64,000 nucleotides of DNA. It comes from Macrostomum lignano. Lineage: Eukaryota. The stretch is from NCBI GenBank assembly GCA_002269645.1, contig NIVC01002200.1, forward strand, positions 62,001 through 126,000. Reading direction: 5' to 3'. Made by a program: the position numbers and the translations under genes. The notes beneath the pieces are model-generated. The model ran no database searches and had not been told where the DNA came from. It worked only from the letters and a program-made list of their open reading frames with translations. This document shows, piece by piece, positions 1-50,999 of this stretch (the first letter of the stretch is position 1; every line of letters starts with the position of its first letter).

Positions 1-775
1 TGGATAGCTGATTAGTTACCTGGATAGCTAATTAGTTACCTGGATAGCTGATTAGTTTCCTGGATAGCTAATTAGTTACCTGGATAGCAGCTGATTAGTT
101 ACCTGGATAGCTGATTAGTCACCTGGATAGCTGATTAGTTACCTGGATAGCTGATTAGTTACCTGGATAGCTGATTAGTTACCTGGATAGCTAATTAGTT
201 ACCTGGATAGCTGATTAGTTACCTGGATAGCTGATTAGTCACCTGGATAGCTGATTAGTTACCTGGATAGCTGATTAGTTACCTGGATAGCTGATTAGTT
301 ACCTGGATAGCTGATTAGTTACCTGGATAGCTAATTAGTTACCTGGATAGCTGATTAGTCACCTGGATAGCTGATTAGTTACCTGGATAGCTGATTAGTT
401 ACCTGGATAGCTAATTAGTTACCTGGATAGCTGATTAGTTACCTGGATAGCTGATTAGTTACCTGGATAGCTAATTAGTTACCTGGATAGCTGATTAGTT
501 TCCTGGATAGCTAATTAGTTACCTGGATAGCAGCTGATTAGTTACCTGGATAGCTGATTAGTTACCTGGATAGCTGATTAGTTACCTGGATAGCTGATTA
601 GTTTCCTGGATAGCTAATTAGTTACCTGGATAGCAGCTGATTAGTTACCTGGATAGGTGATTAGTTACCTGGATAGCTGATTAGTTTCCTGGATAGCTGA
701 TTAGTTACCTGGATAGCTGATTAGTTACCTGGATAGCTGATTAGTTTCCTGGATAGCTAATTAGTTAGCTAGCTA
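1..775. repeat. 20-nt tandem minisatellite (tggatagctgattagttacc)n
   Basis: Unit read directly with 20-nt periodicity and occasional +3 'cag' variants; runs off the window start. Confidence 0.95.
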
Positions 776-1444
776 GATAATTGGTGACTGCATATTATTT
801 TCAGTATATTTACAAGCAATAGTATGAGTATGTAGTTGAGACATTTTATCCCAGAAATGATGAATGCTATAGGTACAATTTTTGTCACTTAATGTGTACG
901 TACCTAAATAATGATTTTTATTGATTGTCAGTATGGTGTAGTTTTTATATATTATTATTCGAGTTAATCATTATAACAAATATTTTAAATACATTGATTA
1001 TTGCCATAGTGTTTTACTGTCAGTCATTATATGCTAATATGATTTTATGCACTGTTATAACAATAATTATTTTATTCGTCCATTTCACTCACTTGTCTGT
1101 TACTGTATTTTTGTACACAAATTTGGCTTATCTTTTCTGGCAATATTTTTGTTGGCTTTTTCTTTAATGCTTCGAATTACCTAATCGACCCGGTTTGTTT
1201 TATTTTTAAGTATAAATTGCTCGAATATCCATTTGTTTATTCTGATCTGACTGAAGTTTGGCATTCTTGCTTTTGGATCGTTTTGTTTATTTGTACTTTT
1301 AGGCAGCATAGTCATTAGCTGCATAGTGAGCCCTTGGCTGATTCAGCGGCAGTATTGACGGGACTCCTGAGCACATGCAAGCGCGCCAATACTGTACACA
1401 GGCAGGCACTCATGCACACGCTCACACAGGGTGTACAAGCCTTG

Positions 1445-1515
1445 AATGCATTTTTGTGCAAGGAATCGAACCAGGGACCCGGGTGCAAGAGTCAGACGCT
1501 GCTCTGGCCCTGTGT
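1445..1515 (-). other. tRNA-derived / SINE-like fragment with pol III B-box
   Basis: Minus strand reads gcagcgtctgactcttgcacccgggtccctGGTTCGATTCCttgcacaaaaat: a B-box consensus preceded by an anticodon-arm-like gcgtctgactc. No complete cloverleaf. Confidence 0.35.
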
Positions 1516-1821
1516 AGACACTTTAAACATGTTTGAGACGCCTTGAATATTGTTCAGACACTTAAAGTACATTAAGACACTTTACCTGCATAGCAAAATG
1601 ATGTATCCAATATTTTTTGGTTGCAGGAACGTCCTTGAGACATCCAATTTATTTATTAATAAAATTACGTATTGGATACGCAATTTTGCTATCAGGGTTA
1701 GACATTTTTGAGACATTTTGAGCACATCTATCAGTATTTTACACTTTACACTTTAAACATGTGAGACATTTTTGGACATCTGAAATGATTCGGACATATT
1801 TGAGACACTCTAGGGCTAGGC

Positions 1822-2096
1822 CATGAAAGAATAGAATGGAGTGCAAGCAAGTTATTTTATCTCGCTCGATTTTCGCTTTTATTGGCTCGTGACTGCCATA
1901 GACAAAGTATTTTTCGTCTCGTTTTCGCTTTCGTTCCCCTCTAAAAGGTCTGTCCCAGCATAGTTCGAGCTCGCATCAAAATATGCTTTCAGCCAATAGG
2001 AAAGAACGGGGGGGGAAAGGGATGTTAAAAGCGAAAATCGAGCGAGATAAAAATAACTTGCTCAGATTAGCACTCGATTCTATTCTTTCCTCCATG
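1822..2096. mobile_element. MITE (non-autonomous DNA transposon, P- or hAT-like)
   Basis: ~60-70-nt imperfect terminal inverted repeats (CATG..GAAAGAATAGAAT.GAGTGC..AGCAAGTTATTTT(T)ATCTCGCTCGATTTTCGCTTTTA) and an 8-bp direct repeat GGCTAGGC at 1814-1821 and 2097-2104. Confidence 0.8.
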
Positions 2097-2814
2097 GGCT
2101 AGGCACATTTGAGACTGTTTTGGAACATTTTAGACTTTCTATGTAGTTACCTTGTGGTAGTCACCATAGTTGTTGGAATTGGCTTATTATTATTGTGCTT
2201 CTTATAAAATTAATAAGTTAAAGGCAAGTATAGTTAGACAGTACAAGTTAGAACTGGCTACCACTTTTAGATACTTAATTAAATTTATTGTCTAACATCC
2301 TCATTCGTGTGTGGGGTGGTTGACAGCGGTAGAATTTCTCTTGATACCAGCGTGTACACTTGTAGCACTTGTGTGCCTGTTCTTAACCAAATTTGGCCCT
2401 GCCAAAGACCAGAGACTTTCATAGATATAATCTGGATTGTGGGGTTTATTAAACTAGCTATAGAATCCTTAGCCTTGTCATTAGACACTGTACTAGTGTA
2501 CTATGTTGTGCTTTTGTAGCCTTATCTGCACAAGTTTGCTCAGCCAGTGTGTTTGCTCAAGTGGGGAGCGAGCGAGTAAAGTGTGTAAACAGGGTGCGTT
2601 ATCTATGACCGTTTTCCGTTTACTCATCTATCTCGACTCACGTGTATTAACTTTAATTAAAGTGCAACTTCAATACCTTGCTATTTGCTAACCTAAGCTT
2701 CAGTTTAACTCATTGGTTTATGTATACCTCTGTAGTATTCAGTTTAGAGAGGCGATTATTCCATTGCATAATCATTGCATCTGTTGGTTATCAGAACTTG
2801 AGTGATACCCAATA

Positions 2815-3235
2815 GGTAGATAATCTCAGTAGGTAGATCATCCAGTAGGTAGATAATTCAGTGGGTAGATAATTCAGTGGGTAGATAATTCAGTTAATAG
2901 ATAATTCAGTAGGTAGATGGTACAAAGGTAGATAATCCAGCAGGTAGATAATCCAGCAGGTAGATTATCCAGCAGGTAGATCATCCAGTAGGTAGATAAT
3001 TCAGTGGGTAGATAATTCAGTGGGTAGATAATTCAGTAAATAGATAATTCAGTAGGTAGATGGTACAAAGGTAGATAATCCAGCAGGTAGATCATCCAGT
3101 AGGTAGATAATTCAGTGGGTAGATAATCCAGTGGGTAGATAATTCAGTTAATAGATAATTCAGTAGGTAGATGGTACAAAGGTAGATAATCCAGCAGGTA
3201 GATGGTACAAAGGTAGATAATCCAGCAAGTAGATG
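2815..3235. repeat. Degenerate ~18-nt minisatellite (ggtagataatt/ccag..)
   Basis: Repeated ggtagataat cores just upstream of XPA. Confidence 0.85.
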
Positions 3236-3303
3236 ATACAGAAGAGAAATACACAAACTACTATTAGTAGTAGATACAAAATGGGCAAATCTCCACTTCA
3301 CTC

Positions 3304-5883
3304 ATGCCGCTAACCCAAGAGCAGCTGGCCCGCAGCGAGCGCAACCGCCAGGCTGCCCTCCTGCTGCGCCAGTCGAAGCAGCGCCTGCGCGACCTGCAGG
3401 ACAAATCCGTTGTCGCCCCATCCGCCTCCACAGGCGCAGCCTCCAACGCCGCGCCAGTAGCCGTCGCCGTCGGTTTCGGCGGTGTCGGTGCCGCGGCGAC
3501 TGACTCTTGTGGCGGCTTCATCTACGAGGAGGACGGCAGCGGCGGCGGCAAGCGAGGAAACCAGCAAAAGCCTCGTCGTCTCGTTGTCGAACCCGGACCG
3601 CTGATCGACCCGAACGAGCTGGTGTGCGCCGACTGCGACCTGCCGTTTAATTCGTCGTTTCTCTACGACAGATTTGACGTTGCCGTGTGCGACGCCTGCT
3701 ACGAGACGCAGCGTGAGGATGCGTATGGCCTGTTGGCTCGCAGCGACGCCAAGTCGCGCTACCTGTTGAAGGACGGCGATTTGGACAGGCGAGAGCCGCC
3801 GTTGCGCTGCCTGCTCAGGCGGAACCCGCACAATCCCAGGGGTGGCGACATGCGCCTGTATTTGGAGGCTCAGGTAGGTGCCGGGTTAGGTTAATTAGTG
3901 GCCTGTCGTATTAGTTAAATAATCTAGATAAGAAAAATTATCTCTAGATAATCCATCAGTAGCTAGATAATCCATCAGTAGCTAGATAATCCATCAGTAG
4001 CTAGATAATCCATCAGTAGCTAGATAATCCATCAGTAGCTAGATAATCCATCAGTAGCTAGATAATCCATCAGTAGCTAGATAATCCATCAGTAGCTAGA
4101 TAATCCATCAGTAGCTAGATAATCCATCAGTAGCTAGATAATCCATCAGTAGCTAGATAATCCATCAGTAGCTAGATAATCCATCAGTAGCTAGATAATC
4201 CATCAGTAGATAGATAATCCATCAGTAGCTAGATAATCCATCAGTAGCTAGATAACCCATCAGTAGTTAGATAATCCATCAGTAGCTAGATAATCCATCA
4301 GCAGCTAGATAATCCACCAGCAGGTAGATAATCCATCAGTAGCTAGATTATCCATCAGTAGCTAGATAATCCACCAGTAGCTAGATAATCCATCAGTAGC
4401 TAGATAATCCATCAGTAGTTAGATAAATTCATCGGTAGTTAGATAATTCATCGGTAGTTAGATAATCCATCAGCAGCTAGATAATCCATCAGCAGCTAGA
4501 TAATCCACCAGCAGCTAGATAATCCATCAGTAGCTAGATTATCCATCAGTAGCTAGATAATCCATCAGTATCTAGATAATCCATCAGTATCTAGATAATC
4601 CATCAGTAGCTAGATAATCCATCAGTAGTTAGATAAATTCATCGGTAGTTAGATAATTCATCGGTAGTTAGATAATCCATCAGTAGCTAGATAATCCATC
4701 AGCAGCTAGATAATCCACCAGCAGGTAGATAATCCATCAGTAGCTAGATAATCCACCAGTAGCTAGATTATCCATCAGTAGCTAGATAATCCATCAGTAG
4801 CTAGATAATCCATCAGTAGCTAGATAATCCATCAGTATCTAGATAATCCGTCAGTATTTAGACAATCCATCAGTAGCTAGATAATCCATCAGTAGCTAGA
4901 TAATCCATCAGTAGCTAGATAATCCATCAGTAGCTAGATTATCCATCAGTAGCTAGATAATCCATCAGTAGCTAGATAATCTATCAGTAGCTAGATAATC
5001 CATCAGTAGCTAGATAATCCACCAGTAGCTAGATTATCCATCAGTAGCTAGATAATCCATCAGTAGCTAGATAATCCATCAGTAGTTAGATAAATTCATC
5101 GGTAGTTAGATAATTCATCGGTAGTTAGATAATCCATCAGTAGCTAGATAATCCATCAGCAGCTAGATAATCCACCAGCAGGTAGATAATCCATCAGTAG
5201 CTAGATTATCCATCAGTAGCTAGATAATCCACCAGTAGCTAGATTATCCATCAGTAGCTAGATAATCCATCAGTAGCTAGATAATCCATCAGTAGCTAGA
5301 TAATCCATCAGTATCTAGATAATCCATCAGTATCTAGATAATCCATCAGTATCTAGATAATCCATCAGTAGCTAGATAATCCACCAGTAGCTAGATAATC
5401 CATCAGTAGCTAGATAATCCACCAGTAGCTAGATAATCCACCAGTAACTAGATAATCCACGTCCACCAGTAGCTAGATAATCCTGTTTCTAGATAAAGGA
5501 CAAAGATAAGCATACAAGTACTTCTGCAGATGGAGATAATCCAGCACATTAGAATACTCTACCCAGCATCTGCCTTCCCCATCATTGTCCAGGTGGCCCA
5601 ACGAGCCCTAGAAGTCTGGGGCTCCGAGGAGGCGCTCAACGCTGAGCACGAGAAGCGCGCCGGCGCCCGCGACCGCGCCAAGAAGCGCCAATTCGATAAG
5701 CGAATGAGCGAGTTGCGGCTGCACGTTCGGTCCAGTCTTGCGCCGAAGCGGCAGTACCGACACGAGCACCGGTTCGGCGACGAGGTCCCTGCGGCCTCCG
5801 CCGGTGTTGACGGGGCCGCCGAGGACGAGTTCTGCCGCACCTGTCTGGACTGCGGCTACCAGCAGACTTTCTGCAAAATGTGA
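3304..5883 (+). CDS. XPA: DNA repair protein XPA (2 exons: 3304-3873, 5593-5883; ~286 aa)
   Basis: C4 zinc finger CADC..FLYDRFDVAVCDAC, then SDAKSRYLLKDGDLDRREPPL, NPHNPRGGDMRLYLEAQ|VAQRALEVWGSEEAL and C-terminal HEHRFG..CLDCGYQQTFCKM. Donor cag|gtaggt at 3873/3874, acceptor ccag|gtg at 5592/5593, phase 0 on both sides. Confidence 0.95.
3945..5485. repeat. 19-nt minisatellite (agctagataatccatcagt)n filling the XPA intron
   Basis: Direct reading of the tandem unit. Confidence 0.95.
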
Positions 5884-6142
5884 CTGAAAATAACTGCATT
5901 TTTTGCTTTCGATTTAATTATTTTACTGTATAATCACTCACTAGCTACTGATAGTAGCTTAGGGGCTTGAATTAAGAAAAAAACAAGGTACTAAATTTAT
6001 CAAATTTGTAAGACTTTTTTCTTGTGTAAAATAAATGAAAATAAATTGTTTCTTTCAATTGCAATAAAAGTATCTATTTCGACTTTTCGTTCTAATATTG
6101 GCCTTCTTTGCTAAAACAGATATTTGAGATTAGTCATTATCC

Positions 6143-9100
6143 ATGGTAAATTTCCCTCTCTTATCAGCACTTCACCCACACTGAGAATCTCCTCTTCACC
6201 CACACTGACCATCTCCTCTTCACCCACACTGAGAATCCCTCTTCACACACACTGAGCATCTCCTCTTCACCCACACTGAGAATCTCCTCTTCACCCACAC
6301 TGAGAATCTCCTCTTCACCCACACTGAGAATCCCCTCTTCACCCACACTGAGAATCTCCTCTTCACCCACACTGAGAATCCCCTCTTCACCCACACTGAG
6401 AATCTCCTCTTCACCCACACGGAGAATCTCCTCTTCACCCACCCACACTGAGAATCTCCTCTTCACCCACACTGAGCATCTCCTCTTCACCCACACTGAG
6501 AATCTCCTCTTCACCCACACTGAGAATCCCCTCTTCACCCACACTGAGAATCTCCTCTTCACCCACACTGAGAATCTCCTCTTCACCCACCCACACTGAG
6601 AATCCCCTCTTCACCCACACTGAGAATCTCCTCTTCACCCACACTGAGCATCTCCTCTTCACCCACACTGAGAATCCCTCTTCACCCACACTGAGAATCC
6701 CCTCTTCACCCACACTGAGCATCCCTCTTCACCCACACTGAGAATCTCCTCTTCACCCACACTGAGAATCTCCTCTTCACCCACCCACACTGAGAATCCC
6801 CTCTTCACCCACACTGAGAATCTCCTCTTCACCCACACTGAGAATCTCCTCTTCACCCACACTGAGAATCCCCTCTTCACCCACACTGAGAATCTCCTCT
6901 TCACCCACATTGAGCATCTCCTCTTCACCCACACTGAGAATCCCCTCTTCACCCACACTGAGAATCCCCTCTTCACCCACACTGAGAATCTCCTCTTCAC
7001 CCACACTGAGAATCTCCTCTTCACCCACCCACACTGAGAATCCCTCTTCACCCACACTGAGAATCCCCTCTTCACCCACACTGAGAATCTCCTCTTCACC
7101 CACCCACACTGAGCATCTCCTCTTCACCCACACTGAGAATCCCCTCTTCACCCACACTGGAAATCGTCTCTAACTTTACTCCAAACCTGCACCCGTCAGG
7201 CCAGAGTCGCCCTTCTGCTCATCGCGGCCCTGTTAGCCCAGGTATCAATCGCCTGCGGCGCGAACCACTCCGCCGCCTCACCACCAGGCCGACTGCCCTT
7301 ACTAATCGTCATATTTGATGGATTCCGTCACGACTACCTCGAACTGTACCGCTCTAGAGGCGTTCAACTGCCAAATTTTGAAGCGTTCGCTAGTCAAGGC
7401 GTTCGAGCTAAACGGGTGAAGAACGTGTACCCTACGGAGACTCTGCCCAATCATCAGAGCCTGGTTACCGGACTCTACTCTGAGAGTCACGGTTTCATTT
7501 TGAACACGTTTGCCGATCCCGAATTGCCAGGCAAATTGTTCTCTGTCTTTGACCAGTCCAGTCTGAATGATCCCGACTGGTCTGCTGGCTGGCCGGAGCC
7601 GTTGTGGGTGACCAATCAGAGGCAGGGCGGCCGATCCGCCGTGGTGCTGTACCCGAATTCCGACCTGCCTTACAACGGCTTTTTGCCCTTTGTACAGGTA
7701 GGAGTTGGTATTAGATAACCTAAAACCTTTATTGGCCAACAAAAAATCATTACACTGGGGAAAGTCAATCTAGTAGATCTAGACAAACCAATCTAGTAGA
7801 TCTAGACAGGCCAGTCTAGCAGATCTAGACAAACCAGTCTAGTAGATCTAGATAGGCCAGTCTAGCAGATCTAGACAGGCCAGTTTAATAGATCTAGACA
7901 AGCCAGTCTACGAGCGTAGTAGATCTAGACAAGCCAATCCTAGACAAGCCAGTCTAGTAGATCTAGACAGGCCAGTCTAGCAGATCTAGACAAGCAATAT
8001 ATGGATCTAGACAAGCTAATCTAGCAGATCTAGATAAACCAATCTAGAAGATCTAGACAAGCCAGTCTATCAGATTTTGACAAGCTAGTCTGGTAGACCT
8101 AGACAAGCCAGTCTGGTAGATCTAGACAAGCTAATCTAGTAGATCTAGACAAGCTAATCTATTTTATCTAGACAAGCTAATCTAGTATATCTAGACAAGT
8201 TAATCTAGTATATCTAGACAAGTTAATCTAGTATATCTAGACAAGCTAATCTAGTATATCTAGACAAGCTAATCTAGTATATCTAGACAGCTAATCTAGT
8301 ATATCTAGAAAAGTTAATCTAGTATATCTAGACAAGTTAATCTAGTATATCTAGACAAGTTAATCTAGTATATCTAGACAAGTTAATCTAGTATATCTAG
8401 ACAAGTTAATCTAGTAGATCTAGACAAGCTAATCTAGTAGATCTAGGCAAGCCAACCCACCCCATCCACTCAACCCAGGTGGACCAGTACGCCACCCTGA
8501 ACAATGGCAGCTCAGTCCGCTATCCGTACAGCCGGCGGGTGAGTCGCATGCTGCACTGGCTGGGCCAGCCGCAGCTGTACGGCATTAATCTGGGCCTGTT
8601 GTACTTTGACGAGCCGGATCACACTGCCCACCAGGCTGGCCACCTGAGCGATGATGTTGCCGCCAGGCTAATAGAATTGGACCAACAGCTTGGCCAATTG
8701 ATGACCGGCTTAAAAGAGCTGGGCCTAACTGATCGAATCAATATCGTATTGACAGCCGATCACGGCATGACGACGGGCAATAGTCGAATCTAATTGACTT
8801 GGATCAAATAGTTAATCCGGATTGGTACGTTAATTACTTAGCCGATAAGGCTAATATACACCTGGGCTTAATGCCGAAACCAGGCCGAACTCAAGATATT
8901 ATTAAAGCCGTCTCGGACGCTAAATTGCCCTACCTGCGGGCTAACCTGGCCTCTCACCTGCCCGATTGGATGCACTTTAACGGGTCGCGGCGGACACCGC
9001 CAGTGTATTTGTACGCGGACCCCCCATACGTCATCGTGGTTGGCGGCATACCGCCTGAGCATCCTGCTAAGTTTGGCGTGCACGGCTACGCTAACAATGA

Positions 9101-9527
9101 CACGGATATGTGGCCTCTGTGGCTGGCTAGGGGGCCGGCATTTCAGTCTGGCGGAGTTGAGATTGATCAGCTGATTGAGTCTGTGGATCTTTATCCCCTG
9201 GCTTGCCGACTATTGGGCATCCGAGCTAATCCGAATAATGGCTCCCTAGATCGGATTAGCGCAGTGCTGTCTTCGCCCGACTGGCTATTGGTTGAGCCGA
9301 TACCAACTGGCAATAAGTTTATCGACAAATTTCTCTCAGACCTGTTTGATTGCTGGTTTAATAAATACAGGCCATATACTCCTGCCTTTGTACTTGGTGC
9401 TCTGTGTCTCTTCGTTTTGGCGCTACTGGTTATTGTTAGCTATCTGGCTTGTCAGTGGCGTACGCGATGGCTGAAGCTGCGGATTGATGCTCAATTTTAC
9501 CGCGCTGCTATTAGACTTAACAAGTGA
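6143..9527 (+). CDS. Ectonucleotide pyrophosphatase/phosphodiesterase, ENPP4/5-like, left copy (exons 6143-6145 [ATG only], 7200-7697, 8479-9527) with a 1-nt frameshift at ~8784
   Basis: Signal peptide M|ARVALLLIAALLAQVS; motifs FDGFRHDY, PTETLPNH (catalytic Thr), DEPDHTAH, TADHGM, HGY; C-terminal TM helix. GT-AG phase-0 introns with branch-like ctctaac before 7199. One T is missing versus the right-arm copy (agtcga vs agttcga), giving TAA at 8791-8793. Confidence 0.88.
6168..7160. repeat. 24-nt minisatellite (cacccacactgagaatctcctctt)n in ENPP intron 1
   Basis: Direct reading; source of the spurious WVKRRFSV / SVGEEEIL ORFs. Confidence 0.95.
7770..8450. repeat. ~23-nt TCTAGA-containing minisatellite in ENPP intron 2
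   Basis: Unit tctagacaagctaatctagtaga with variants. Confidence 0.9.
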
Positions 9528-9618
9528 CTAATTCAGTGACTAATTGGCTGCTCTCCTATTAAACAGGAACAGGGAAAGAATTAGAGCGGGGTTGTTGCAG
9601 TCTGTTCTGTTGGTCTTT

Positions 9619-9767
9619 GAGGCGGGGTTGCTACAGTAGCAGTGCGTCCTGCTGCTGCTCTCTTATTGGCTAGGAGGGGAAGGAATTGAGGCGGGGTTGC
9701 TACAGTAGCAGTGTGTCCTGCTGCTGCTCTCTTATTGGCTAGGAGGGGAAGGAATTGAGGCGGGGTT
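9619..9767. repeat. 69-bp minisatellite, part left of the LINE insertion
   Basis: Units start at 9619, 9688 and 9757 (the third is interrupted); unit gaggcggggttgctacagtagcagtgtgtcctgctgctgctctcttattggctaggaggggaaggaatt. Confidence 0.9.
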
Positions 9768-9857
9768 ACTTACTTACTTACTACTGACGGGGGGCGCAGG
9801 CGCCGCGAATAGGCCGCGAGGCCCCTATCGCAACCCCAAGGTAAAAGAGCACAAGGA

Positions 9858-14691
<4,834 letters not shown>

Positions 14692-15434
14692 CTACATGTA
14701 GAGCGTAGAGAAAATCGGAAGCAAAAGAATTGACAGTCTAAGCAGGTTTCCAAAAAGCTGTTGCTTAAAACAGCAATTTTTTACTTTTACGAAAGTTTTT
14801 ATTCTTCGATATTTATCCAATTTTATTTTTAGTTAGCGGCAGTCCGCCGCTGCTTATTTTTGACTGAATCCTTTCTAGCAGGTCTTCTAATAGACAAACA
14901 TCAACTCCCGTATTCCGGTGAACGCAAAGCAATTTTTTGCTTTGATATTTTCTTCTTTTTTAGCCACAGCTCATAGCTATCGATATCTTCGATGCCTTTA
15001 ATTTTTATATTACTCGTACTTCAAGTACTCTTGTATAGATATTCCAGTAGTTAAACAAATCATTTGCGTTGTTTTCTGTTATAATATAATATACGGCTGT
15101 GTTCCAGGTGCCTGCGTGCTGAAAATATATAAGCATATCGTAGTTCAATTTTTTAATTAGCGCGTCATCACACAGAGTGTACACCGGCCCCGACTTTGTG
15201 CACTGGAGAATGTGCACAAGCAACTAGCCGAAGTTTCAAGTTATCCCTATAGTTAATGTACTTTTTCACCAAATCCTCGCACATGTACTATAGACCAGAA
15301 GAAGAGAAGAGTGGATAAGCAGAGAAAAGTCAAACCTTGAGCGGGTCGGATTGCTGTTGTGAAGTGCCGACCCAGGTACACTAGGCAGTTAAGGCATTCA
15401 AATCTGCATGTAACAGATTGCTCGGCTCTTACAG

Positions 15435-16616
15435 TCATCCTCGCCTCGTCGCCACGGCCGCCGCCGCCGTCGTCAAGAAGTCTCGTCGGCAAGCGCCGTC
15501 GTGGCCGCTGCCAGCCTCATCGACGACCCTTTGTCGGCATTCGCTGTCGACGCGTCGAATTCGCCGGCTGTCGATACCGCTAGCGGTCAGCTGGTCTGTC
15601 GTCGAGCTCGGAACCTCGACGTCTGCCTTCGGCCCTGCGCCTTCGACTTGGTCCGGTCGAACATGCGCGACATGTACCGGCGCAGCGCCTGGGGCTGGAG
15701 CGACTCGGCTAAACGCAGAGAGCTGTTCCACCCGAAGGCTTATTTCCTGTTGCTGTTGCCGCTTCCAGAAGAGGCCGCAGGCGTTGCTGACTGCGGCCAG
15801 CAGCAGATTGTCGGGTTGGCCAACTTTCGGTTCGATTTGGAGGATGGCAAACCTGTGCTATATTTGTATGAGATTCAGGTTAGTGCTATGAGATTCAGGC
15901 TAGTGCTATGAGATTCAGGTTAGTGCTATGAGATTCAGGCAAGTGCTATGAGATTCAGGCAAGTGCTATGAGATTCAGGCAAGTGCTATGAGATTCAGGC
16001 AAGTGCTATGAGATTCAGGCAAGTGCTATGAGATTCAGATTAGTGCTATAAGATTCAGGCTAGTGCTATGAGATTCAGGCAAGTGCTATGAGATTCAGGT
16101 AAGTGCTATGAGATTCAGGCTAGTGCTATGAGATTTAAGCAGTTGCTATGAGATTCAGGCAAGTGCTACGATGTCAAACTGTGTTCAGCATTGTTCTATG
16201 AGAGTCAGGCTTTATGCATTCAAGTTTATTTTTGTAACACCGAAATCGAACCCGGGTCTTTCGGCGTCAAATCAACTTCGCTACGTAGGCTTAGTGGGGC
16301 TTTTTAAGTTTCGTTGCAGCTATATTAAAAATAGCAAAAAACTCTATTTTTACTACTATATTGCTGGTAGGTAGCGCCGGACTGTCGCAGGCGCGGCATT
16401 GGCCAACGCCTCCTGGCCTGTCTTCGCCGGGTTGCCACCGGCGCGGGAATGTCCGGCGTGGTGGCCACAGTTTTCAAATTCAATGGCGTTTCGTTGGAAT
16501 TTTTTGCTGCAGCTGGCTTTGAGCAAGAGCAGCCCGCGGCTGCGGCAGATCCCCACTATGCGATTCTGTGGCTTCCCCTGACTCGAGAGACCAATAAAAC
16601 ACGGAAAATAACTTAA
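15435..16616 (+). CDS. NAA40: N-alpha-acetyltransferase 40 (NatD)-like, left copy (exons 15435-15878, 16371-16616; initiator codon not found in the genome)
   Basis: Motifs AASLIDDPLSAF, AFDLVRSNMRDMYRRSAWGWSDSAKRREL, ANFRFDLEDGKPVLYLYEIQ|VAPDCRRRGIGQRLL (GNAT acetyl-CoA motif), ATVFKFN..SLEFF..YAIL. Donor cag|gttagt at 15878, acceptor ggtag|gta at 16370, acceptor ttacag at 15434; all phase 0. Confidence 0.85.
15868..16170. repeat. 20-nt minisatellite derived from the NAA40 exon/intron junction (tatgagattcag|gYWagtgc)
   Basis: The unit contains the last 12 exon nt plus a donor-like hexamer; ~15 copies. Confidence 0.9.
16215..16292 (-). other. Degenerate tRNA-like / SINE-like element in the NAA40 intron
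   Basis: The right-arm homolog (~50899-50960, +) reads gcctacgTAGCGAAGTTGA..ccggGGTTCGATTCCggtgttacaaaaat: A-box-like and B-box motifs, but the anticodon arm is missing. Confidence 0.35.
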
Positions 16617-16832
16617 CTGCGTTAATGCGCAAAAAACGCTACTTATTTTTTTCTCTAAAGTCAGTAGGCATTCGCGAATATGAATCTCAAACTAAATTTT
16701 TTGCATTTATTAGCTGATGCATTGTAGTTATTGTATTCATGTAGTAGGCGAATAGATATCATTATTGATAAATTGTTGCTATATTAAACTTGTCATTGAA
16801 TTTAGCACTAATTTTTCAAACTGAAGATTATC

Positions 16833-16846
16833 GTTGCCATAGCAAC
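16833..16846. promoter_or_regulatory. RFX X-box-like palindrome GTTGCCATAGCAAC
   Basis: Matches the GTNRCC-N0-3-RGYAAC consensus; lies in the convergent 3' region between NAA40 and PDI; retained in the right arm (50343-50356). Confidence 0.4.
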
Positions 16847-16871
16847 GGCGAAGACAAAATCTCGACAAATT

Positions 16872-17096
16872 TCAAAGCTCCTCTTTCTTCTTTGCTGGCT
16901 CGGCGGCTTCTTCCACGGGCTTTTTAGCTGGCTCGCCTGCGGCGCGTTTCTCCAAGAAAGCCAGCAAGCCGCTGGTGGTCACAGGCGACTCGGTGTAGCT
17001 CTCTCCCTTCTTCCCGTCTGCGAACAGCAGCAGCGTTGGAAAGCCTTCGATGTTGTTGTCCACGCAGATGCCTGCGGGTGGGGTGGGGTGGCTTGG

Positions 17097-17181
<85 letters not shown>

Positions 17182-17218
17182 ATATATCTATCTACCTATC
17201 TATCTATCTATCTATCTA

Positions 17219-17254
<36 letters not shown>

Positions 17255-17259
17255 TCTAA

Positions 17260-17339
<80 letters not shown>

Positions 17340-17411
17340 AATCTATCTAATATATCTATCTATCTATCTATCTATCTAACTATCTATCTATCTATCTGTC
17401 TATCTATCTAA

Positions 17412-17483
<72 letters not shown>

Positions 17484-17487
17484 TTAT

Positions 17488-17521
<34 letters not shown>

Positions 17522-17534
17522 GTCTATCTATCTG

Positions 17535-17595
<61 letters not shown>

Positions 17596-17618
17596 TTTTT
17601 TATCTATCTATCTATCTG

Positions 17619-17654
<36 letters not shown>

Positions 17655-20600
17655 ACTATCTATCTATCTGTCTATCTAACTATCAATCTATCTATCCATC
17701 TATCTATCCATCATCTACCTACAGCCCCACAGCACCTTCATTAGCCTTGACATCGCAGTTGACTCCGACCAGCGCAGCTGAGGAGTCCTTGCCGAGCTTC
17801 TCGGCAGCCGCATCGAACTGCGGCTTGGCCCGCTGGCAGTGCGAGCACCAGGGCGCGTAGAACATCGCCAGCACCAGCCGGCTGGACTTGAGCACAGCTG
17901 AGAACTGGTCCTGACCTTCAATTAGCCTGGCATGCTTCATCATATCCTCCGGTTTCTCAGCTTCGCTTTCCTCATCTTCATCCTCGGATTTGCCAGCCTC
18001 GCCGCCGCGGCCCGAACCCATCGACTTCTCCTTGGGCGGATTGGCCAGGAAGTTCAGCAGCTGTTTGGTCTCGATCTCTTCGTCGAATTCCGCCCACGCT
18101 TCGCCCTTCTTCAGTAGGCGAATTGTTGGGTAGCCCTCCACTTTGGCATCTTCGCACAGCTCTGCGGTGGGAATGGCGTTCGGGCTCGCTGTCAGTGCAC
18201 TGATCTCCATGTGTGATTCCCCTGACCCACTGTCAGTGCACTGATTCCCTGTGTGATTCCCCTGACTCACTGTCAGTGCACCGATTCCCCTGTGTGATTC
18301 CCCTGACTCGCTGTCAGTGCACTGATTCCCTGTGTGATTCCACTAACTCGCTGTCAGTGCACCGATTCCCCTGTGTGATTCCCCTGACTCGCTGTCAGTG
18401 CACCGATTCCCCTGTGTGATTCCCCTGACTCGCTGTCAGTGCACTGATTCCCTGTGTGATTCCCCTGACTCTCTCTCTCTCTCTCAGTGTACTGATTCCC
18501 CTGTGTAATTCCCCTGACTGACTGTCAGTGCACTGATTCCCCTGTGTGATTCCCCGTACTCACAGAAACTCTCAGCCGATCATTTCCCTGACTCACAGAA
18601 ACTGTCAGTTAATCATTCCCCCGACTCACTATGATTGTCTTTGACGTCACAATTGACGGCAGCCATCAGAGCAGCTGCTGCCTCGTCAGCCTTGGACTGA
18701 GCGCCCGCCCGCAGAGTCGCGGCCGCCCGAGCGAACTTCGGCTTGGCGTCCTGGCAGTGCGGGCACCAGGGGGCGTAGTAGAACACCAGGGCCAGCTCTC
18801 GGCCTGACAGCGTCTGCGTGTAATTGGCCGCCGTCAGATAGGTCACACCCTCCATGCTGCGGGTGTGGATACCGGCTGGGTTAGTGTGTGCACCCACAGG
18901 GATAGTGTACACCCACAGGGATAGTGTACACCTCAGGGACAGTGTACACCCACAGGGATAGTGTACACCCACAGAGACAGTGTACACCCACAGGGATAGT
19001 GTACACCCACAGGGATAGTGTACACCTCAGGGACAGTGTCCACCCACAGGGATAGTGTACACCCACAGAGACAGTGTACACCCACAGGGACAGTGTACAC
19101 CCACAGGGATAGTGTACACCCACAGAGACAGTGTACACCCACAGGGATAGTGTACACCCACAGGGATAGTGTACACCCACAGGGATAGTGTACACCTCAG
19201 GGACAGTGTCCACCCACAGGGATAGTGTACACCCACAGGGACAGTGTACACCCACAGGGACAGTGTACACCCACAGGGACAGTGTACACCCACAGGGATA
19301 GTGTGCACACACAGGGATAGTGTACATCCACAGGGATAGTGTACACCCATGGGGATAGTGTACACCCACAGAGATTGTGTGCACCCACAATGACGGTGTA
19401 CACCCGCGGGATAGTGTACATGTACACCCACAGCTCACACAGAGTCGGGTTCGGCAGGCCCGTCCTCCTCGGCCGACGAGCTTGGCGGCCGCTTCTCCCC
19501 CTCCTTCGGCGGGTTCCGCATGAAGGTCAGCAGCGCTTTTTCCGTCGATTCTTCCTCGAAGTCCTGCACCTGCTTGCCGCGGCTGTACAGCCGAAATGTT
19601 GGATAGCCTTCGATCTTCTCCTTGTCGCACAAGTCTTTGTTTGGTTGGGGGTTTGGGTTCAGGACTAGTTTCTATTCTACTCTACTTTACTCTACTCTGC
19701 CAATCATCTCTACTCTACCAGTCTATCCCTGCTCTACTCTACACACCAGTCTATTCCTACTCTACTCTACTCTACCAGTCTATTCCTACTCTACTCTACT
19801 CTACCAGTCTATTCCTACTCTACTCTACTCTACCAGTTTATTCCTACTCTACTCTACTCTACCTGTCTATTCCTACTCTACTCTACTCTACCTGTCTATT
19901 CCTACTCTACTCTACACTACCCGTCTGTCCCTACTCTACTCTACTCTACTCTACCAGTCTATTCCTACTCTACTCTACTCTACTAGTCTATTCCTACTCT
20001 ACTCTACTCTACCAGTCTATTCCTACTCTACTCTACTCTACCAGTCTATTCCTACTCTACTCTACACTACCAATCTGTCCCTACTCTACTCTACACTACC
20101 AGTCTGTCCCTACTCTACTCTACTCTACCTGTCTATTCCTACTCTACTCTACACTACCAGTCTGTCCCTACTCTACTCTACTCTACCAGTCTATTCCTAC
20201 TCTACTCTACTCTACCAGTCTATTCCTACTCTACTCTACTCTACCAGTCTATTCCTACTCTACTCTACACTACCAATCTGTCCCTACTCTACTCTACACT
20301 ACCAGTCTGTCCCTACTCTACTCTACTCTACCTGTCTATTCCTACTCTACTCTACACTACCAGTCTGTCCCTACTCTACTCTACTCTACCAGTCTATTCC
20401 TACTCTACTCTACTCTACCAGTCTATTCCTACTCTACTCTACTCTACCAGTTTATTCCTACTCTACTCTACTCTACCTGTCTATTCCTACTCTACTCTAC
20501 TCTACCTGTCTATTCCTACTCTACTCTACACTACCCGTCTGTCCCTACTCTACTCTACTCTACTCTACCAGTCTATTCCTACTCTACTCTACTCTACTAG

Positions 20601-35834: not shown

Positions 35835-37283
35835 AAACTTAGGATGGATTGCTAATCTAGTCAAAACACTATAATGAATTGTATGGATTGCTAATCTAGT
35901 CAAAACACTATAATGAATAGTATGGATTGCTAATCTAGTCAAAACACTATAATGAATAGTATGGATTGCTAATCTAGTCAAAACACTATAATGAATAGTA
36001 TGAATTGCTAATCTATCAAAACACTATAATGAATAGTATGAATTGCTAATCTAATCAAAACACTATAATGAATAGTATGGATTGCTAATCTAGTCAAAAC
36101 ACTATAATGAATAGTATGAATTGCTAATCTAGTCAAAACACTATAAGAATAGTATGAATTGCTAATCTAGTCAAAACACTATAATGAATAGTATGAATTG
36201 CTAATCTAGTCAAAACACTATAATGAATAGTATGAATTGCTAATCTATCAAAACACTATAATGAATAGTATGAATTGCTAATCTAATCAAAACACTATAA
36301 TGAATTAGTATGATTGCTAATCTAGTCAAAACACTATAATGAATAGTATGAATTGCTAATCTAGTCAAAACACTATAATGAATAGTATGAATTGCTAATC
36401 TAGTCAAAACACTATAATGAATAGTATGGATTGCTAAGCTAGTCAAAACACTATAATGAATAGTATGAATTGCTAATCTAGTCAAAACACTATAATGAAT
36501 AGTATGGATTGCTAAGCTAGTCAAAACACTATAATGAATTGTATGGATTGCTAATCTAGTCAAAACACTATAATGAATTGTATGAATTGCTAATCTAGTC
36601 AAAACACTATAATGAATTGTATGGATTGCTAAGCTAGTCAAAACACTATAATGAATTATGAATTGCTAATCTAGTCAAAACACTATAATGAATAGTATGG
36701 ATTGCTAATCTAGTCAAAACACTATAATGAATTGTATGATTGCTAATCTAGTCAAAACACTATAATGAATAGTATGGATTGCTAATCTAATCAAAACACT
36801 ATAATGAATAGTATGGATTGCTAATCTAGTCAAAACACTATAATGAATTGTATGGATTGCTAATCTAGTCAAAACACTATAATGAATTGTATGAATTGCT
36901 AATCTAGTCAAAACACTATAATGAATAGTATGAATTGCTAATCTAGTCAAAACACTATAATGAATAGTATGGATTGCTAATCTAATCAAAACACTATAAT
37001 GAATAGTATGGATTGCTAATCTAGTCAAAACACTATAATGAATAGTATGGATTGCTAATCTAGTCAAAACACTATAATGAATAGTATGAATTGCTAATCT
37101 AGTCAAAACACTATAATGAATAGTATGGATTGCTAACTAGTCAAAACACTATAATGAATAGTATGGATTGCTAATCTAATCAAAACACTATAATGAATAG
37201 TATGGATTGCTAATCTAGTCAAAACACTATAAGAATAAGTATGGATTGCTAATCTAGTCAAAACACTAAAGGAATAGTATGGA
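35835..37283. repeat. 39-nt satellite (ctaatctagtcaaaacactataatgaatagtatggattg)n running into the gap
   Basis: Direct reading; degrades next to the Ns. Confidence 0.95.
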
Positions 37284-37952
37284 NNNNNNNNNNNNNNNNN
37301 NNNNNNNNNNNNNNNNNNNNNNNNNNNNNNNNNNNNNNNNNNNNNNNNNNNNNNNNNNNNNNNNNNNNNNNNNNNNNNNNNNNNNNNNNNNNNNNNNNNN
37401 NNNNNNNNNNNNNNNNNNNNNNNNNNNNNNNNNNNNNNNNNNNNNNNNNNNNNNNNNNNNNNNNNNNNNNNNNNNNNNNNNNNNNNNNNNNNNNNNNNNN
37501 NNNNNNNNNNNNNNNNNNNNNNNNNNNNNNNNNNNNNNNNNNNNNNNNNNNNNNNNNNNNNNNNNNNNNNNNNNNNNNNNNNNNNNNNNNNNNNNNNNNN
37601 NNNNNNNNNNNNNNNNNNNNNNNNNNNNNNNNNNNNNNNNNNNNNNNNNNNNNNNNNNNNNNNNNNNNNNNNNNNNNNNNNNNNNNNNNNNNNNNNNNNN
37701 NNNNNNNNNNNNNNNNNNNNNNNNNNNNNNNNNNNNNNNNNNNNNNNNNNNNNNNNNNNNNNNNNNNNNNNNNNNNNNNNNNNNNNNNNNNNNNNNNNNN
37801 NNNNNNNNNNNNNNNNNNNNNNNNNNNNNNNNNNNNNNNNNNNNNNNNNNNNNNNNNNNNNNNNNNNNNNNNNNNNNNNNNNNNNNNNNNNNNNNNNNNN
37901 NNNNNNNNNNNNNNNNNNNNNNNNNNNNNNNNNNNNNNNNNNNNNNNNNNNN
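37284..37952. other. Assembly gap (~669 N)
   Basis: Run of N; the end position is fixed by the frame of the flanking ORF. Confidence 0.98.
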
Positions 37953-38437
37953 CAGCGTAACCAGCAGACTCCGCAGCAGCAGCCAAGCAAACACAGCAGC
38001 AAAAGCAGCAACAGCAGCAGCCAGGTGTTGCTGCAGCCTCAGTAGCAGCCGCAGCGGCCGCATCGGCAGCAGCAGCAGCTTCATCAACCGCAAAATCTGC
38101 TCAACAGCAGCAGAAACAGCAGCCTCAGCATCCGCAACAGCAAGTGCTGCATCAGTACACCGAGTACACGGTCAGTATCTGGAATCTGGCTACCCCAACC
38201 ACCGCATCACTGATGATGCAGCAGCACCAGTATCATCATCATCAGCATCAGCAGCAGCACTTGGCGCCAGATTCTTCTTATAGCCATCAATACCAGAGAC
38301 AGATGTACTCAACCTCCTACGCCTCTGGTGGCTATCAGCAGCAGTTCTACCAGCCTCATCAGCAGCATCATCAGATGGCGATGCAGCAGAATTATTCTCA
38401 ACAGGCTGGGCCGCCGCAAACGCCTCAATATTTTTGA
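37953..38437 (+). pseudogene. 3' fragment of the last exon of the CECR2-like gene (second copy), with small indels
   Basis: Ends ...QQAGPPQTPQYF* exactly like 29684; several 1-3-nt deletions near the gap. Confidence 0.75.
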
Positions 38438-50317: not shown

Positions 50318-50999
50318 AATTTGTCGAGATTTTGTCTTCGCCGTTGCTATGGCAACGATAATCTTCAGTTTGAAAAATTAGTGCTAAATTCAATGACAAG
50401 TTTAATATAGCAACAATTTATCAATAATGATATCTATTCGCCTACTACATGAATACAATAACTACAATGCATCAGCTGATAAATGCAAAAAATTTAGTTT
50501 GAGATTCATATTCGCGAATGCCTACTGACTTTAGAGAAAAAAATAAGTAGCGTTTTTTGCGCATTAACGCAGTTAAGTTATTTTCCGTGTTTTATTGGTC
50601 TCTCGAGTCAGGGGAAGCCACAGAATCGCATAGTGGGGATCTGCCGCAGCCGCGGGCTGCTCTTGCTCAAAGCCAGCTGCAGCAAAAAATTCCAACGAAA
50701 CGGCATTGAATTTGAAAACTGTGGCCACCACGCCGGACATTCCCGCGCCGGTGGCAACCCGGCGAAGACAGGCCAGGAGGCGTTGGCCAATGCCGCGCCT
50801 GCGACAGTCCGGCGCTACCTGCCAGCAATATAGTAGTAAAAATAGAGTTTTTTGCTATTTTTAATATAGCTGCAACGAAACTTAAAAAGCCCCACTAAGC
50901 CTACGTAGCGAAGTTGATTTGACGCGAAAGACCGGGGTTCGATTCCGGTGTTACAAAAATAAACTTGAATGCATAAAGCCTGACTCTCATAGAACAATG

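What the first reader, a model, noticed from the sequence alone, without database searches (positions are those of the whole stretch)
5883..7230. Candidate XPA-ENPP operon with a trans-splice acceptor just past the XPA poly(A) signals
Seen: the XPA stop (5883) is followed by AATAAA at 6030, 6040 and 6063. Next come a branch-like ctaat, a pyrimidine tract and aaaacAG (6118-6119), then the ENPP ATG at 6143. This leaves essentially no room for a separate promoter. Established: in operons resolved by SL trans-splicing, the downstream acceptor sits ~100 nt after the upstream 3' end. Inference: a DNA-repair gene and an ectonucleotidase are co-transcribed; NAA40 (same strand, ~1.2 kb further in the LINE-free arm) might be a third cistron.
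Basis: partly seen in the sequence, partly recalled or inferred. Interest (0 to 1): 0.7.

Follow-up and report, generated by a model that had tools for sequence, protein, structure and literature searches.

The report
Flatworm XPA–ENPP operon, acceptor misplaced
This is a stretch of the Macrostomum lignano (flatworm) genome where a DNA-repair gene and a nucleotide-cleaving enzyme gene are already annotated as one transcription unit resolved by spliced-leader trans-splicing.

Summary
The window is identical to Macrostomum lignano assembly Mlig_3_7, contig NIVC01002200.1. This flatworm has one 35-nt spliced leader (SL) ending in ATG. About 30% of its genes are reported as trans-spliced and about 15% as lying in operons. 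The operon idea is supported and is already in the public annotation: XPA is Mlig026438.g1 and ENPP is Mlig026438.g2, two genes named from one transcriptional unit. Two paralogous loci are annotated the same way.

The proposed acceptor (AG 6118-6119) and start codon (ATG 6143) are probably wrong. Two public annotation sets start the ENPP coding sequence without a methionine at base 7200, or 3 nt later in two NCBI copies, just after CAG 7197-7199. An in-frame stop lies at 7171-7173. The SL's terminal AUG joined at 7200 gives MARVALLLIAALLAQ…, a signal peptide. An SL joined at 6120 would put its AUG out of frame.

The XPA-ENPP spacer is 1316 nt, of which 990 nt is a 24-bp satellite. NAA40 also starts without a Met at an acceptor (TTACAG|, 15435), so it is plausibly trans-spliced too. 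No RNA reads could be examined, so trans-splicing and co-transcription remain inferred.

The parts
3304..3873 (+). XPA coding exon 1. ATG is at 3304; the NCBI CDS of BOX15_Mlig026438g1 begins at 3307. The exon ends at donor CAG|GTAGGT.
   Evidence: Pfam XPA_N and XPA_C; 98% identity to M. lignano A0A1I8G7R7; PAA60043.1 is identical apart from the Met.
3874..5592 (+). XPA intron, mostly a 19-bp satellite (3944-5459, about 80 copies).
5593..5883 (+). XPA coding exon 2, ending ...CGYQQTFCKM with stop TGA at 5881-5883.
5884..6095 (+). Predicted XPA 3' UTR. AATAAA occurs at 6030-6035, 6040-6045 and 6063-6068, followed by a T-rich stretch (6074-6092). The cleavage site is inferred at about 6080-6095 and was not observed.
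   Evidence: P(>=3 AATAAA) = 0.007. The region is conserved in the two paralogous loci.
6113..6119 (+). Probably not the main 5' end of ENPP mRNA.
   Evidence: one of three AGs here; does not fit [T/C]TNCAG; the paralogs have AAACTCAG at this place (an indel); the SL-AUG would be out of frame.
6143..6151 (+). ATG|GTAAAT, a possible 3'-terminal ATG of a mini-exon plus a donor. Absent from both public gene models; function unproven.
   Evidence: Conserved in L002 and L003. It is the only donor-like GT between 6069 and 7199.
6170..7159 (+). 24-bp satellite (CTTCACCCACACTGAGAATCTCCT, about 41 copies) that fills the XPA-ENPP spacer. It contains no GT, no ATG and no CAG or TAG, only 39 GAG.
   Evidence: It is about 2.4 kb (about 100 copies) in the paralogous loci.
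7170..7199 (+). 3' splice region of the annotated ENPP 5' end. It holds a branch-like CTAAC (7170-7174), an in-frame TAA (7171-7173), a pyrimidine-rich tract and the acceptor CAG (7197-7199).
7200..7697 (+). First genomic coding exon of the ENPP4/5-like gene (BOX15_Mlig026438g2). It begins GCC AGA GTC (ARVALLL...) with no ATG and ends at donor CAG|GTAGGA.
   Evidence: Pfam Phosphodiest, 6e-65; the NCBI CDS starts exactly here.
7698..8478 (+). ENPP intron containing a 23-bp satellite (7767-8452).
8479..9527 (+). ENPP last coding exon, with a C-terminal transmembrane segment and stop at 9525-9527. In this copy a 1-nt deletion at about 8784 (AGTTCG to AGTCG) shifts the frame. ATTAAA is at 9558.
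   Evidence: (PAA60044.1 stops at ...GNSRI).
15428..15878 (+). NAA40 acceptor cTTACAG| (ends at 15434) and first coding exon (15435-15878). The exon starts SSSPRRHG... with no ATG, and an in-frame TAA lies 24 nt upstream. Candidate third cistron.
   Evidence: UniProt A0A1I8IMC5 starts at the same residue; GNAT domain.
16371..16616 (+). NAA40 second coding exon, through to the stop.

Best explanation
This is the Mlig026438 locus of Macrostomum lignano. XPA (g1) and an ENPP4/5-like ectonucleotidase (g2) lie head to tail and are most likely transcribed as one precursor.

Proposed mechanism:
- XPA mRNA is cleaved and polyadenylated behind three AATAAA signals, at about 6080-6095.
- The ENPP mRNA 5' end is made by trans-splicing the single 35-nt M. 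lignano spliced leader onto CAG 7197-7199.
- The SL ends in AUG and the exon starts GCC AGA GTC in frame. The SL therefore donates the start codon, giving M-ARVALLLIAALLAQVSIAC..., a signal peptide.
- The 1.1-kb piece between the XPA 3' end and this acceptor is discarded. About 990 nt of it is a satellite with no GT, ATG, CAG or TAG, so it adds length but no competing splice or start signals.
- NAA40 downstream starts the same way (TTACAG|TCA, no genomic ATG). It may be a further cistron.

Shown: sequence identity to the assembly, gene content, the annotated CDS boundaries, the reading-frame logic, and the distances. Inferred: that SL-bearing reads underlie the annotated 5' end, the position of the poly(A) site, and co-transcription from one promoter.

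My sub-estimates:
- SL joined at 7199|7200 with an SL-AUG start: about 0.8.
- True co-transcription with XPA: about 0.65.
- NAA40 in the same unit: about 0.35.
For: (1) Identity. The window has 0 mismatches over 18,793 bases against NIVC01002200.1 of GCA_002269645.1.

(2) Annotation. NCBI names XPA BOX15_Mlig026438g1 and ENPP BOX15_Mlig026438g2. The paralogous pairs are Mlig015453g1/g2 and Mlig004330g2/g3. The authors' naming rule is that a transcriptional unit MligN.1 contains genes MligN.g1 and MligN.g2, with boundaries defined by SL and poly(A) read signals (Suppl. Fig. 5a of PMC5730564; methods).

(3) ENPP 5' end. The CDS is 5'-partial and starts at window 7200, right after CAG. The UniProt models A0A1I8GMT0 and A0A1I8G8X4 start at the same residue, ARVALLL. 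I take these UniProt entries to derive from the older ML2 annotation and so to be independent. That attribution is from memory, not a tool result.

(4) Control. The neighbouring thioredoxin-domain gene is annotated with a normal ATG. Missing Mets are therefore not a general habit of the annotation.

(5) No genomic start is possible in this exon. TAA lies in frame at 7171-7173 and there is no ATG between it and the catalytic domain.

(6) The SL is CGGTCTCTTACTGCGAAGACTCAATTTATTGCATG. SL plus 7200 onward translates to MARVALLL....

(7) Flatworm SL AUGs are a documented source of initiator Met (Cheng et al. 2006, as cited in PMC9851317 and PMC12582326). The terminal ATG is noted for Macrostomum in PMC10468722.

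(8) Distance. Stop to acceptor is 1316 nt. It is 326 nt after subtracting the satellite, and about 120 nt from the predicted cleavage site. The published operon criterion is under 1 kb after repeat subtraction, with a mode near 100 bp, and repeats are reported to inflate operon spacers.

(9) The satellite has 0 GT, 0 ATG and 0 CAG/TAG.
Against: - No RNA read was seen here. The SL junction at 7200 is inferred from annotation boundaries.
- The CAG context CGTCAG fits [T/C]TNCAG only in part.
- Two of the three NCBI copies start the CDS 3 nt later (RVALLL). I cannot explain this.
- Reads multi-map among three copies that are 98-99% identical, so evidence for this particular copy may be borrowed from the others.
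- The ATG|GTAAAT at 6143 is a donor-like site in cis. By the Conrad et al. 1993 rule (quoted) such a site would favour cis-splicing of the 7199 acceptor.
- A transcriptional unit assembled from short reads can merge neighbours through read-through without a shared promoter. About 60% of trans-spliced M. lignano genes are not in operons.
- This copy of ENPP carries a frameshift.
Confidence: 0.6

Rival explanations
1. ENPP is trans-spliced at 7199|7200 and uses the SL-AUG, but it is transcribed from its own promoter inside the 1.1-2.5 kb spacer. The pair is then not an operon, and the shared transcriptional unit reflects read-through or merging by the assembler.
For: - The spacer is 1316 nt here and about 2.7 kb in the paralogs, far longer than a classical ~100-nt intercistronic region.
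- Only about 40% of trans-spliced M. lignano genes are assigned to operons.
- The operon call in the literature is a distance criterion, not a measurement.
- XPA-ENPP adjacency is not seen around XPA in Cichlidogyrus or around ENPP5 in Clonorchis.
Against: - The unique (non-satellite) part of the spacer is only 326 nt, and most of that is XPA 3' UTR.
- All three loci have XPA and ENPP under one transcriptional-unit name.
- Gene predictors also fused XPA, ENPP and NAA40 into single models (P0062, P0022).
Confidence: 0.2
2. The acceptor is used in both modes. CAG 7199 is trans-spliced to the SL and is also cis-spliced from a short upstream exon ending in ATG (6143-6145)|GTAAAT. Because both 5' partners end in AUG, both mRNAs encode the same protein.
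For: - ATG|GTAAAT is the only donor-like GT in the spacer.
- It is conserved in all three copies.
- It is expected only 0.04-0.14 times by chance.
- In parasitic flatworms 20-95% of SL acceptors are also used in cis (PMC12582326).
- In L003 the XPA acceptor is annotated as cis-spliced to an upstream gene's exon (P0065).
Against: - Neither public annotation contains this exon or a Met-initiated ENPP CDS.
- GTAAA does not fit the dominant donor motif GT[G/A]AG.
- The three copies are recent duplicates, so their conservation says little.
Confidence: 0.13
3. One reading: the SL is trans-spliced at AG 6118-6119, a 26-nt exon carries the ENPP ATG at 6143, and the satellite lies in a cis-spliced intron (6146-7199).
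For: - The motifs are present.
- A branch-like CTAAT lies 23 nt upstream of the AG, and the 40 nt before it are 68% pyrimidine.
- An upstream donor in cis should divert the 7199 acceptor to cis-splicing (Conrad et al. 1993, as quoted).
Against: - Under this model the CDS would be complete and start with Met. In both annotations and all copies it is 5'-partial at or near 7200.
- The SL-AUG would sit 26 nt upstream of ATG 6143, out of frame, opening a 21-codon ORF that overlaps the ENPP start.
- AAACAG misses the [T/C]TNCAG motif at two positions.
- The AG lies only about 30-50 nt from the poly(A) signals.
Confidence: 0.07

Closest known systems
Macrostomum lignano SL-resolved operons, i.e. transcriptional units with several trans-splice sites (Wudarski et al. 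2017, PMC5730564; Ustyantsev & Berezikov 2021, PMC8629364)
   Same: Same organism and same assembly. The genes are adjacent on the same strand and named g1/g2 of one unit. The downstream gene begins at a CAG acceptor. A repeat-inflated spacer shrinks to about 120-330 nt after repeat subtraction. There is a single SL.
   Different: Nothing in kind. This pair has not been singled out in a paper that I could find. The acceptor context matches the published motif only partly.
Flatworm mRNAs that take their initiator Met from the 3'-terminal AUG of the SL (Cheng et al. 2006 J Biol Chem, as cited in PMC9851317 and PMC12582326; 'slORFs')
   Same: The first genomic exon has no ATG, an in-frame stop lies upstream of the acceptor, and the SL-AUG is in frame with a conserved protein. 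The same is true of NAA40, and of XPA in the L003 copy.
   Different: Translation from the SL-AUG was shown for Schistosoma mansoni. Here it is inferred from reading frames and annotation only.
Caenorhabditis elegans SL2-type operons
   Same: A poly(A) signal of the upstream gene is followed by a trans-splice acceptor of the downstream gene on one precursor.
   Different: M. lignano has one SL and no specialised SL2. The raw spacer is 1.1-2.7 kb rather than about 100 nt. The leader supplies the start codon, which nematode SLs are not built to do.
Gene-prediction chimeras across flatworm operons (PMC12582326)
   Same: UniProt A0A1I8GAV0 fuses XPA exon 2, ENPP and NAA40. A0A1I8IWQ8 fuses ENPP and NAA40. 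PAA92718.1 fuses an upstream gene to XPA. That paper treats such chimeras as signs of polycistronic pre-mRNA.
   Different: A chimera can also be a pure prediction artefact. One intron I inferred from the A0A1I8GAV0 protein junction (5880 to 7204) looks invented to keep a frame open.

Membership tests
M. lignano SL-resolved operon (criteria of PMC8629364) | Immediately adjacent genes on the same strand, with no opposite-strand gene between them | tested here: met
   XPA is at 3304-5883 (+) and ENPP at 7200-9527 (+). Only a satellite lies between them.
M. lignano SL-resolved operon (criteria of PMC8629364) | The downstream gene is SL trans-spliced, with SL-containing reads at its first exon | tested here: inconclusive
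   No reads are available. Indirect evidence: the CDS is 5'-partial at an acceptor in two annotation sets, there is no genomic ATG, the SL-AUG is in frame, and the gene has a g2 name.
M. lignano SL-resolved operon (criteria of PMC8629364) | Repeat-adjusted intergenic distance under 1 kb (mode about 100 bp) | tested here: met
   1316 nt from stop to acceptor, minus the 990-nt array, leaves 326 nt. The distance is about 120 nt from the predicted cleavage site.
M. lignano SL-resolved operon (criteria of PMC8629364) | One promoter and a polycistronic precursor RNA | not testable with these tools
   The only evidence is the shared transcriptional-unit name in three loci.
M. lignano trans-splice acceptor motif [T/C]TNCAG (found at 44% of sites) | The six bases before the junction | tested here: inconclusive
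   At 7199, CGTCAG matches 5 of the 6 motif positions (the T is missed). At 6119, AAACAG matches 4 of 6. At the NAA40 acceptor (15434), TTACAG is a full match. The motif is present at under half of true sites.
SL-AUG-initiated mRNA (flatworm slORF) | No usable genomic start, and the SL 3' AUG in frame with the conserved ORF | tested here: met
   TAA at 7171-7173 is in frame, and SL plus the exon translates to MARVALLL....
SL-AUG-initiated mRNA (flatworm slORF) | Translation actually starts at the SL AUG | not testable with these tools
   This needs ribosome profiling or N-terminal proteomics.
C. elegans SL2-type operon | A specialised downstream leader (SL2) and a spacer of about 100 nt | tested here: not met
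   M. lignano has a single SL. The raw spacer is 1.1-2.7 kb.
XPA | XPA_N zinc-finger and XPA_C domains | tested here: met
   Pfam PF01286 (2.8e-7) and PF05181 (1.8e-17). 40-43% identity to vertebrate, Ciona and mollusc XPA.
ENPP / type I phosphodiesterase-nucleotide pyrophosphatase | Full Phosphodiest domain with the catalytic motifs | tested here: met
   PF01663 at 6.3e-65 over profile positions 1-341 of 342. The named hits are mostly ENPP5 or AP3A hydrolase (ENPP4-type) entries. The motifs FDGFR, YPTETLPNH, DEPDHTAH and ADHGM are read directly from the sequence. This copy carries a frameshift.
NAA40 (N-alpha-acetyltransferase 40) | GNAT domain and orthology to NAA40 | tested here: met
   PF00583 at 2.7e-11. 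UniProt A0A1I8IMC5, named N-alpha-acetyltransferase 40, is 93% identical.

The most novel reading that the evidence does not exclude
The short stretch ending in ATG|GTAAAT (6143-6151) is a genome-encoded stand-in for the spliced leader. It would be a cis exon that, like the SL, ends in AUG and splices to the same acceptor (7199). ENPP could then be made with an identical reading frame either from the XPA-driven precursor by trans-splicing or from a local start site by cis-splicing. Such 'SL-mimic' first exons would be a general solution for flatworm genes whose start codon lives in the leader.
Probability: 0.12. Interest if true: 0.45.

Novelty: already known. Interest (0 to 1): 0.15.

Why it matters
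The biology is routine for this animal. Operons resolved by a single spliced leader, spacers bloated by repeats, and leader-donated start codons are all published for M. lignano or for flatworms in general. This pair is already split as g1/g2 in the public annotation.

The practical value is as a caution for sequence-only reading of flatworm genomes:
- A gene's first exon can lack a start codon altogether.
- The nearest upstream ATG is therefore a trap.
- Raw intergenic distances mislead unless satellites are subtracted.
- Gene predictors fuse such neighbours. Three chimeric proteins from this locus family are in the public databases.

The locus also shows three consecutive genes (XPA, ENPP, NAA40) that all appear to rely on the leader's AUG.

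Tried and rejected
- SL sequence search: the 35-nt SL with up to 3 mismatches gave no match in the window, and no 3' fragment of the SL of 8 nt or more is present. The ATG|GTAAAT is therefore not an SL RNA gene.
- Rfam at gathering thresholds over the whole window, and tRNA search over 1-20000: nothing.
- Gene ids Mlig026438, Mlig015453 and Mlig004330 in the supplements of PMC5816591 and PMC5730564: not found. I could not read a per-gene trans-splicing flag.
- XPA, ENPP and NAA40 among the conserved operons of parasitic flatworms (supplements of PMC12582326): not found.
- Transcript contigs of M. lignano from public read assemblies: none in the protein clusters. The Logan contigs holding XPA relatives (L006, L007) are from other, unidentified samples and were not pursued.
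- Synteny: in Cichlidogyrus the gene after XPA is on the opposite strand. The Clonorchis ENPP5 locus shows a second ENPP downstream and no XPA. The Calicophoron protein was not on record.
- Pfam on three ORFs of the gene upstream of XPA in L003: no hits.
- Splice-site motifs could not discriminate the two acceptors. Even the certain donors here (GTAGGT, GTAGGA, GTTAGT) miss the published GT[G/A]AG motif.
- Bacterial promoter and terminator scans were not run because they do not apply to an animal genome.

Full report
**What the window is.** The XPA protein assembled from the window is 98% identical to a Macrostomum lignano UniProt entry. The DNA matches contig NIVC01002200.1 of assembly GCA_002269645.1 (Mlig_3_7) with 0 mismatches over 18,793 compared bases. 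Window position equals record position minus 62,000. M. lignano is a free-living flatworm with one 35-nt spliced leader (SL), CGGTCTCTTACTGCGAAGACTCAATTTATTGCATG. About 30% of its genes are reported as SL trans-spliced and about 15% as organised in operons. After repeats are subtracted, operon spacers peak near 100 bp. The authors set an operon threshold of 1 kb and note that repeats inflate these spacers (PMC8629364).

**Checking the observation.** Every motif is at the stated place: TGA at 5881-5883, AATAAA at 6030, 6040 and 6063, CTAAT at 6092, AG at 6118-6119, and ATG at 6143.
- Three AATAAA in 259 nt is above chance. The expected number is 0.4, and P(>=3) = 0.007.
- The AG is one of three in the 74 nt before the ATG. 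Its context, AAACAG, does not fit the published trans-splice motif [T/C]TNCAG.
- The ATG is followed directly by GTAAAT, and reading straight on hits a stop after 13 codons. It can begin ENPP only through a splice from 6145 to 7200.
- ATGGT[AG]A occurs 0.109 times per kb per strand in this window. One copy in the 326 nt of non-satellite spacer is suggestive, not compelling.

**Gene models.**
- XPA is 3304-3873 plus 5593-5883, 286 aa, with Pfam XPA_N and XPA_C. Its intron is mostly a 19-bp satellite.
- ENPP is 7200-7697 plus 8479-9527. It has a full Phosphodiest domain (6e-65) and its named database hits are mostly ENPP5 or AP3A hydrolase (ENPP4-type) entries. It has an N-terminal signal-like segment and a C-terminal transmembrane segment.
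- Upstream of 7200 there is an in-frame TAA at 7171-7173. There is no ATG between that stop and the catalytic core. The start codon therefore cannot lie in this exon.

**What the public annotation says.** NCBI lists XPA here as BOX15_Mlig026438g1 (PAA60043.1) and ENPP as BOX15_Mlig026438g2 (PAA60044.1). Two further copies are named Mlig015453g1/g2 (same contig, inverted) and Mlig004330g2/g3 (another contig).

The authors assembled 'transcriptional units' from RNA-seq. They then cut them into genes where SL-containing reads and poly(A)-adjacent reads gave boundaries. [quoted passage not shown] So XPA and ENPP are already annotated as two genes under one unit name, in all three loci.

The annotated ENPP CDS is 5'-partial and begins at window 7200, the first base after CAG 7197-7199. 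UniProt models A0A1I8GMT0 and A0A1I8G8X4 begin at the same residue, ARVALLL. I believe these come from the older ML2 annotation and are therefore independent, but that attribution is from memory. As a control, the neighbouring thioredoxin-domain gene is annotated with an ordinary ATG start.

**How it most likely works.** The SL ends in ATG. Joined to 7200 it reads ATG GCC AGA GTC..., that is MARVALLLIAALLAQVSIAC..., a typical signal peptide.

All reported flatworm SLs end in AUG. Use of this AUG as initiator Met was shown for Schistosoma mansoni by Cheng et al. 2006 (as cited in PMC9851317 and PMC12582326). The Macrostomum genome paper PMC10468722 also notes that the final ATG of the leader is probably the start codon.

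If the SL were joined at 6120 instead, its AUG would lie 26 nt before ATG 6143. It would be out of frame and would open a 21-codon ORF overlapping the ENPP start. In that case the annotations would also show a complete, Met-initiated CDS, which they do not.

My model has four steps:
1. XPA is cleaved and polyadenylated at about 6080-6095. This is inferred from the AATAAA cluster and the T-rich stretch behind it.
2. The SL is spliced to 7199|7200.
3. The leader supplies the AUG.
4. The intervening 1.1 kb is discarded.

**The spacer.** Of the 1316 nt from stop to acceptor, 990 nt (6170-7159) is a 24-bp satellite. It contains no GT, no ATG and no CAG or TAG, only 39 GAG. It adds length without adding competing donors, good acceptors or start codons.

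After subtraction the distance is 326 nt from the stop and about 120 nt from the predicted cleavage site. That is inside the published operon criterion and close to its mode. In the two paralogous loci the same satellite is about 2.4 kb, while the unique flanks are nearly identical.

**NAA40.**
- NAA40 exon 1 starts at 15435, behind cTTACAG, a full match to the trans-splice motif.
- An in-frame TAA lies 24 nt upstream.
- UniProt A0A1I8IMC5 starts at the same residue, SSSPRRHG, without Met.
- In this copy an antisense LINE of about 4.8 kb sits between ENPP and NAA40.
- In the inverted copy (ENPP 62013 to 60049, NAA40 from 58787, minus strand) the spacer is 1261 nt, about 370 nt of it a 69-bp array.
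- That leaves roughly 850-900 nt of unique sequence. This is below the 1-kb threshold but far from the mode, and it is enough room for a promoter.
- I give co-transcription of NAA40 about 0.35.

**What remains uncertain.**
- I saw no RNA reads. The junction at 7200 and the co-transcription are inferred from annotation boundaries, names and frames.
- Two of the three NCBI copies start the CDS 3 nt later (RVALLL). I cannot explain this.
- The three copies are 98-99% identical, so reads may multi-map. The annotation of this copy may be borrowed from the others.
- This copy's ENPP has a 1-nt deletion (AGTTCG to AGTCG at about 8784) that truncates the annotated protein to 270 aa. It may be a real pseudogene or an assembly error.
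- The donor-like ATG|GTAAAT is conserved in all copies and is the only donor-like GT in the spacer. In parasitic flatworms many SL acceptors are also used in cis. A dual cis/trans use of the 7199 acceptor is therefore possible, and it is the most novel reading left open.
- A separate promoter in the spacer cannot be excluded.

**Comparison and novelty.** The locus meets the published M. lignano operon criteria that can be tested on sequence. It is not a C. elegans SL2-type operon: there is a single leader and the raw spacer exceeds 1 kb. XPA-ENPP adjacency was not seen in the parasitic flatworm loci I could fetch, so the arrangement looks lineage-specific. Nothing here is new in kind, and the pair is already split as g1/g2 in the public annotation. 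I rate it as already known, with low interest.

**Verdict.** The operon inference is supported. The acceptor and start codon are relocated from 6119/6143 to 7199/SL-AUG.

Noticed in passing
window 3296-3309; L002 about 5825-5840; L003 about 5415-5430: The XPA 5' end differs among the three copies exactly at the trans-splice junction. L003 has ...CACTGCAG|CCG, an acceptor with no genomic ATG and in-frame TAG TAG upstream. The window has ...CACTCATGCCG and L002 has ...CATGCATGCCG, whose last 6 nt equal the end of the SL. NCBI starts the XPA CDS at CCG (3307) in the window copy. Mlig_3_7 was Pilon-polished with RNA-seq reads. This may therefore be leader sequence imprinted on the assembly rather than a real CAG-to-CATG change.
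   Followed up: partly
window 8780-8790: ENPP of this copy lacks one T (AGTTCG to AGTCG) relative to L002 and L003. This shifts the frame, and NCBI ends the protein at ...GNSRI (270 aa). According to the annotated protein, the L003 copy has a different frameshift further on (P0060). Either could be a real pseudogene or a long-read indel error.
   Followed up: partly
window 9858-14685 (minus strand); arrays 9617-9767 and 14144-14640: An antisense non-LTR retrotransposon lies between ENPP and NAA40. Its ORFs look like endonuclease, reverse transcriptase and RNase H by eye; no domain search was run. It appears to have inserted into a 69-bp tandem array, which now flanks it on both sides. The array is continuous and LINE-free in the paralogous loci L002 and L003.
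   Followed up: no
window 50621-64000 (minus strand): A second, inverted copy of the locus lies within the same window. ENPP runs from 62013 to 60049 and is intact (514 aa, PAA60048.1). The spacer satellite runs from 62014 to the window end. NAA40 starts at 58787, and its first exon is interrupted by about 7 kb (58473 to about 51530).
   Followed up: partly
L003 1843-5430: PAA92718.1 (400 aa) joins an out-of-frame piece of the last exon of an upstream gene to the XPA acceptor. That gene has an ORF at L003 1992-2684 with no Pfam hit. XPA is g2 of unit Mlig004330 there, so the unit may begin with a gene that lies just upstream of the window.
   Followed up: partly
UniProt A0A1I8GAV0 (P0062) and A0A1I8IWQ8 (P0022): These are chimeric predicted proteins. 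The first fuses XPA exon 2, ENPP and NAA40 (1067 aa). The second fuses the ENPP C-terminal part, antisense LINE sequence and NAA40 (896 aa). Gene predictors ran across this gene row.
   Followed up: yes
window 1-767, 2809-3241, 3944-5459, 6170-7159, 7767-8452, 15867-16168: Nearly every intron and spacer of these genes carries its own 16-24-bp satellite of 0.3-1.5 kb. Copy numbers differ between the paralogous loci.
   Followed up: no
window 36001-38000: A 2-kb stretch with only 18.6% G+C, made of a tandem repeat (…TGGATTGCTAATCTAGTCAAAACACTATAATGAATTGTA…), stands out from the roughly 50% G+C surroundings.
   Followed up: no
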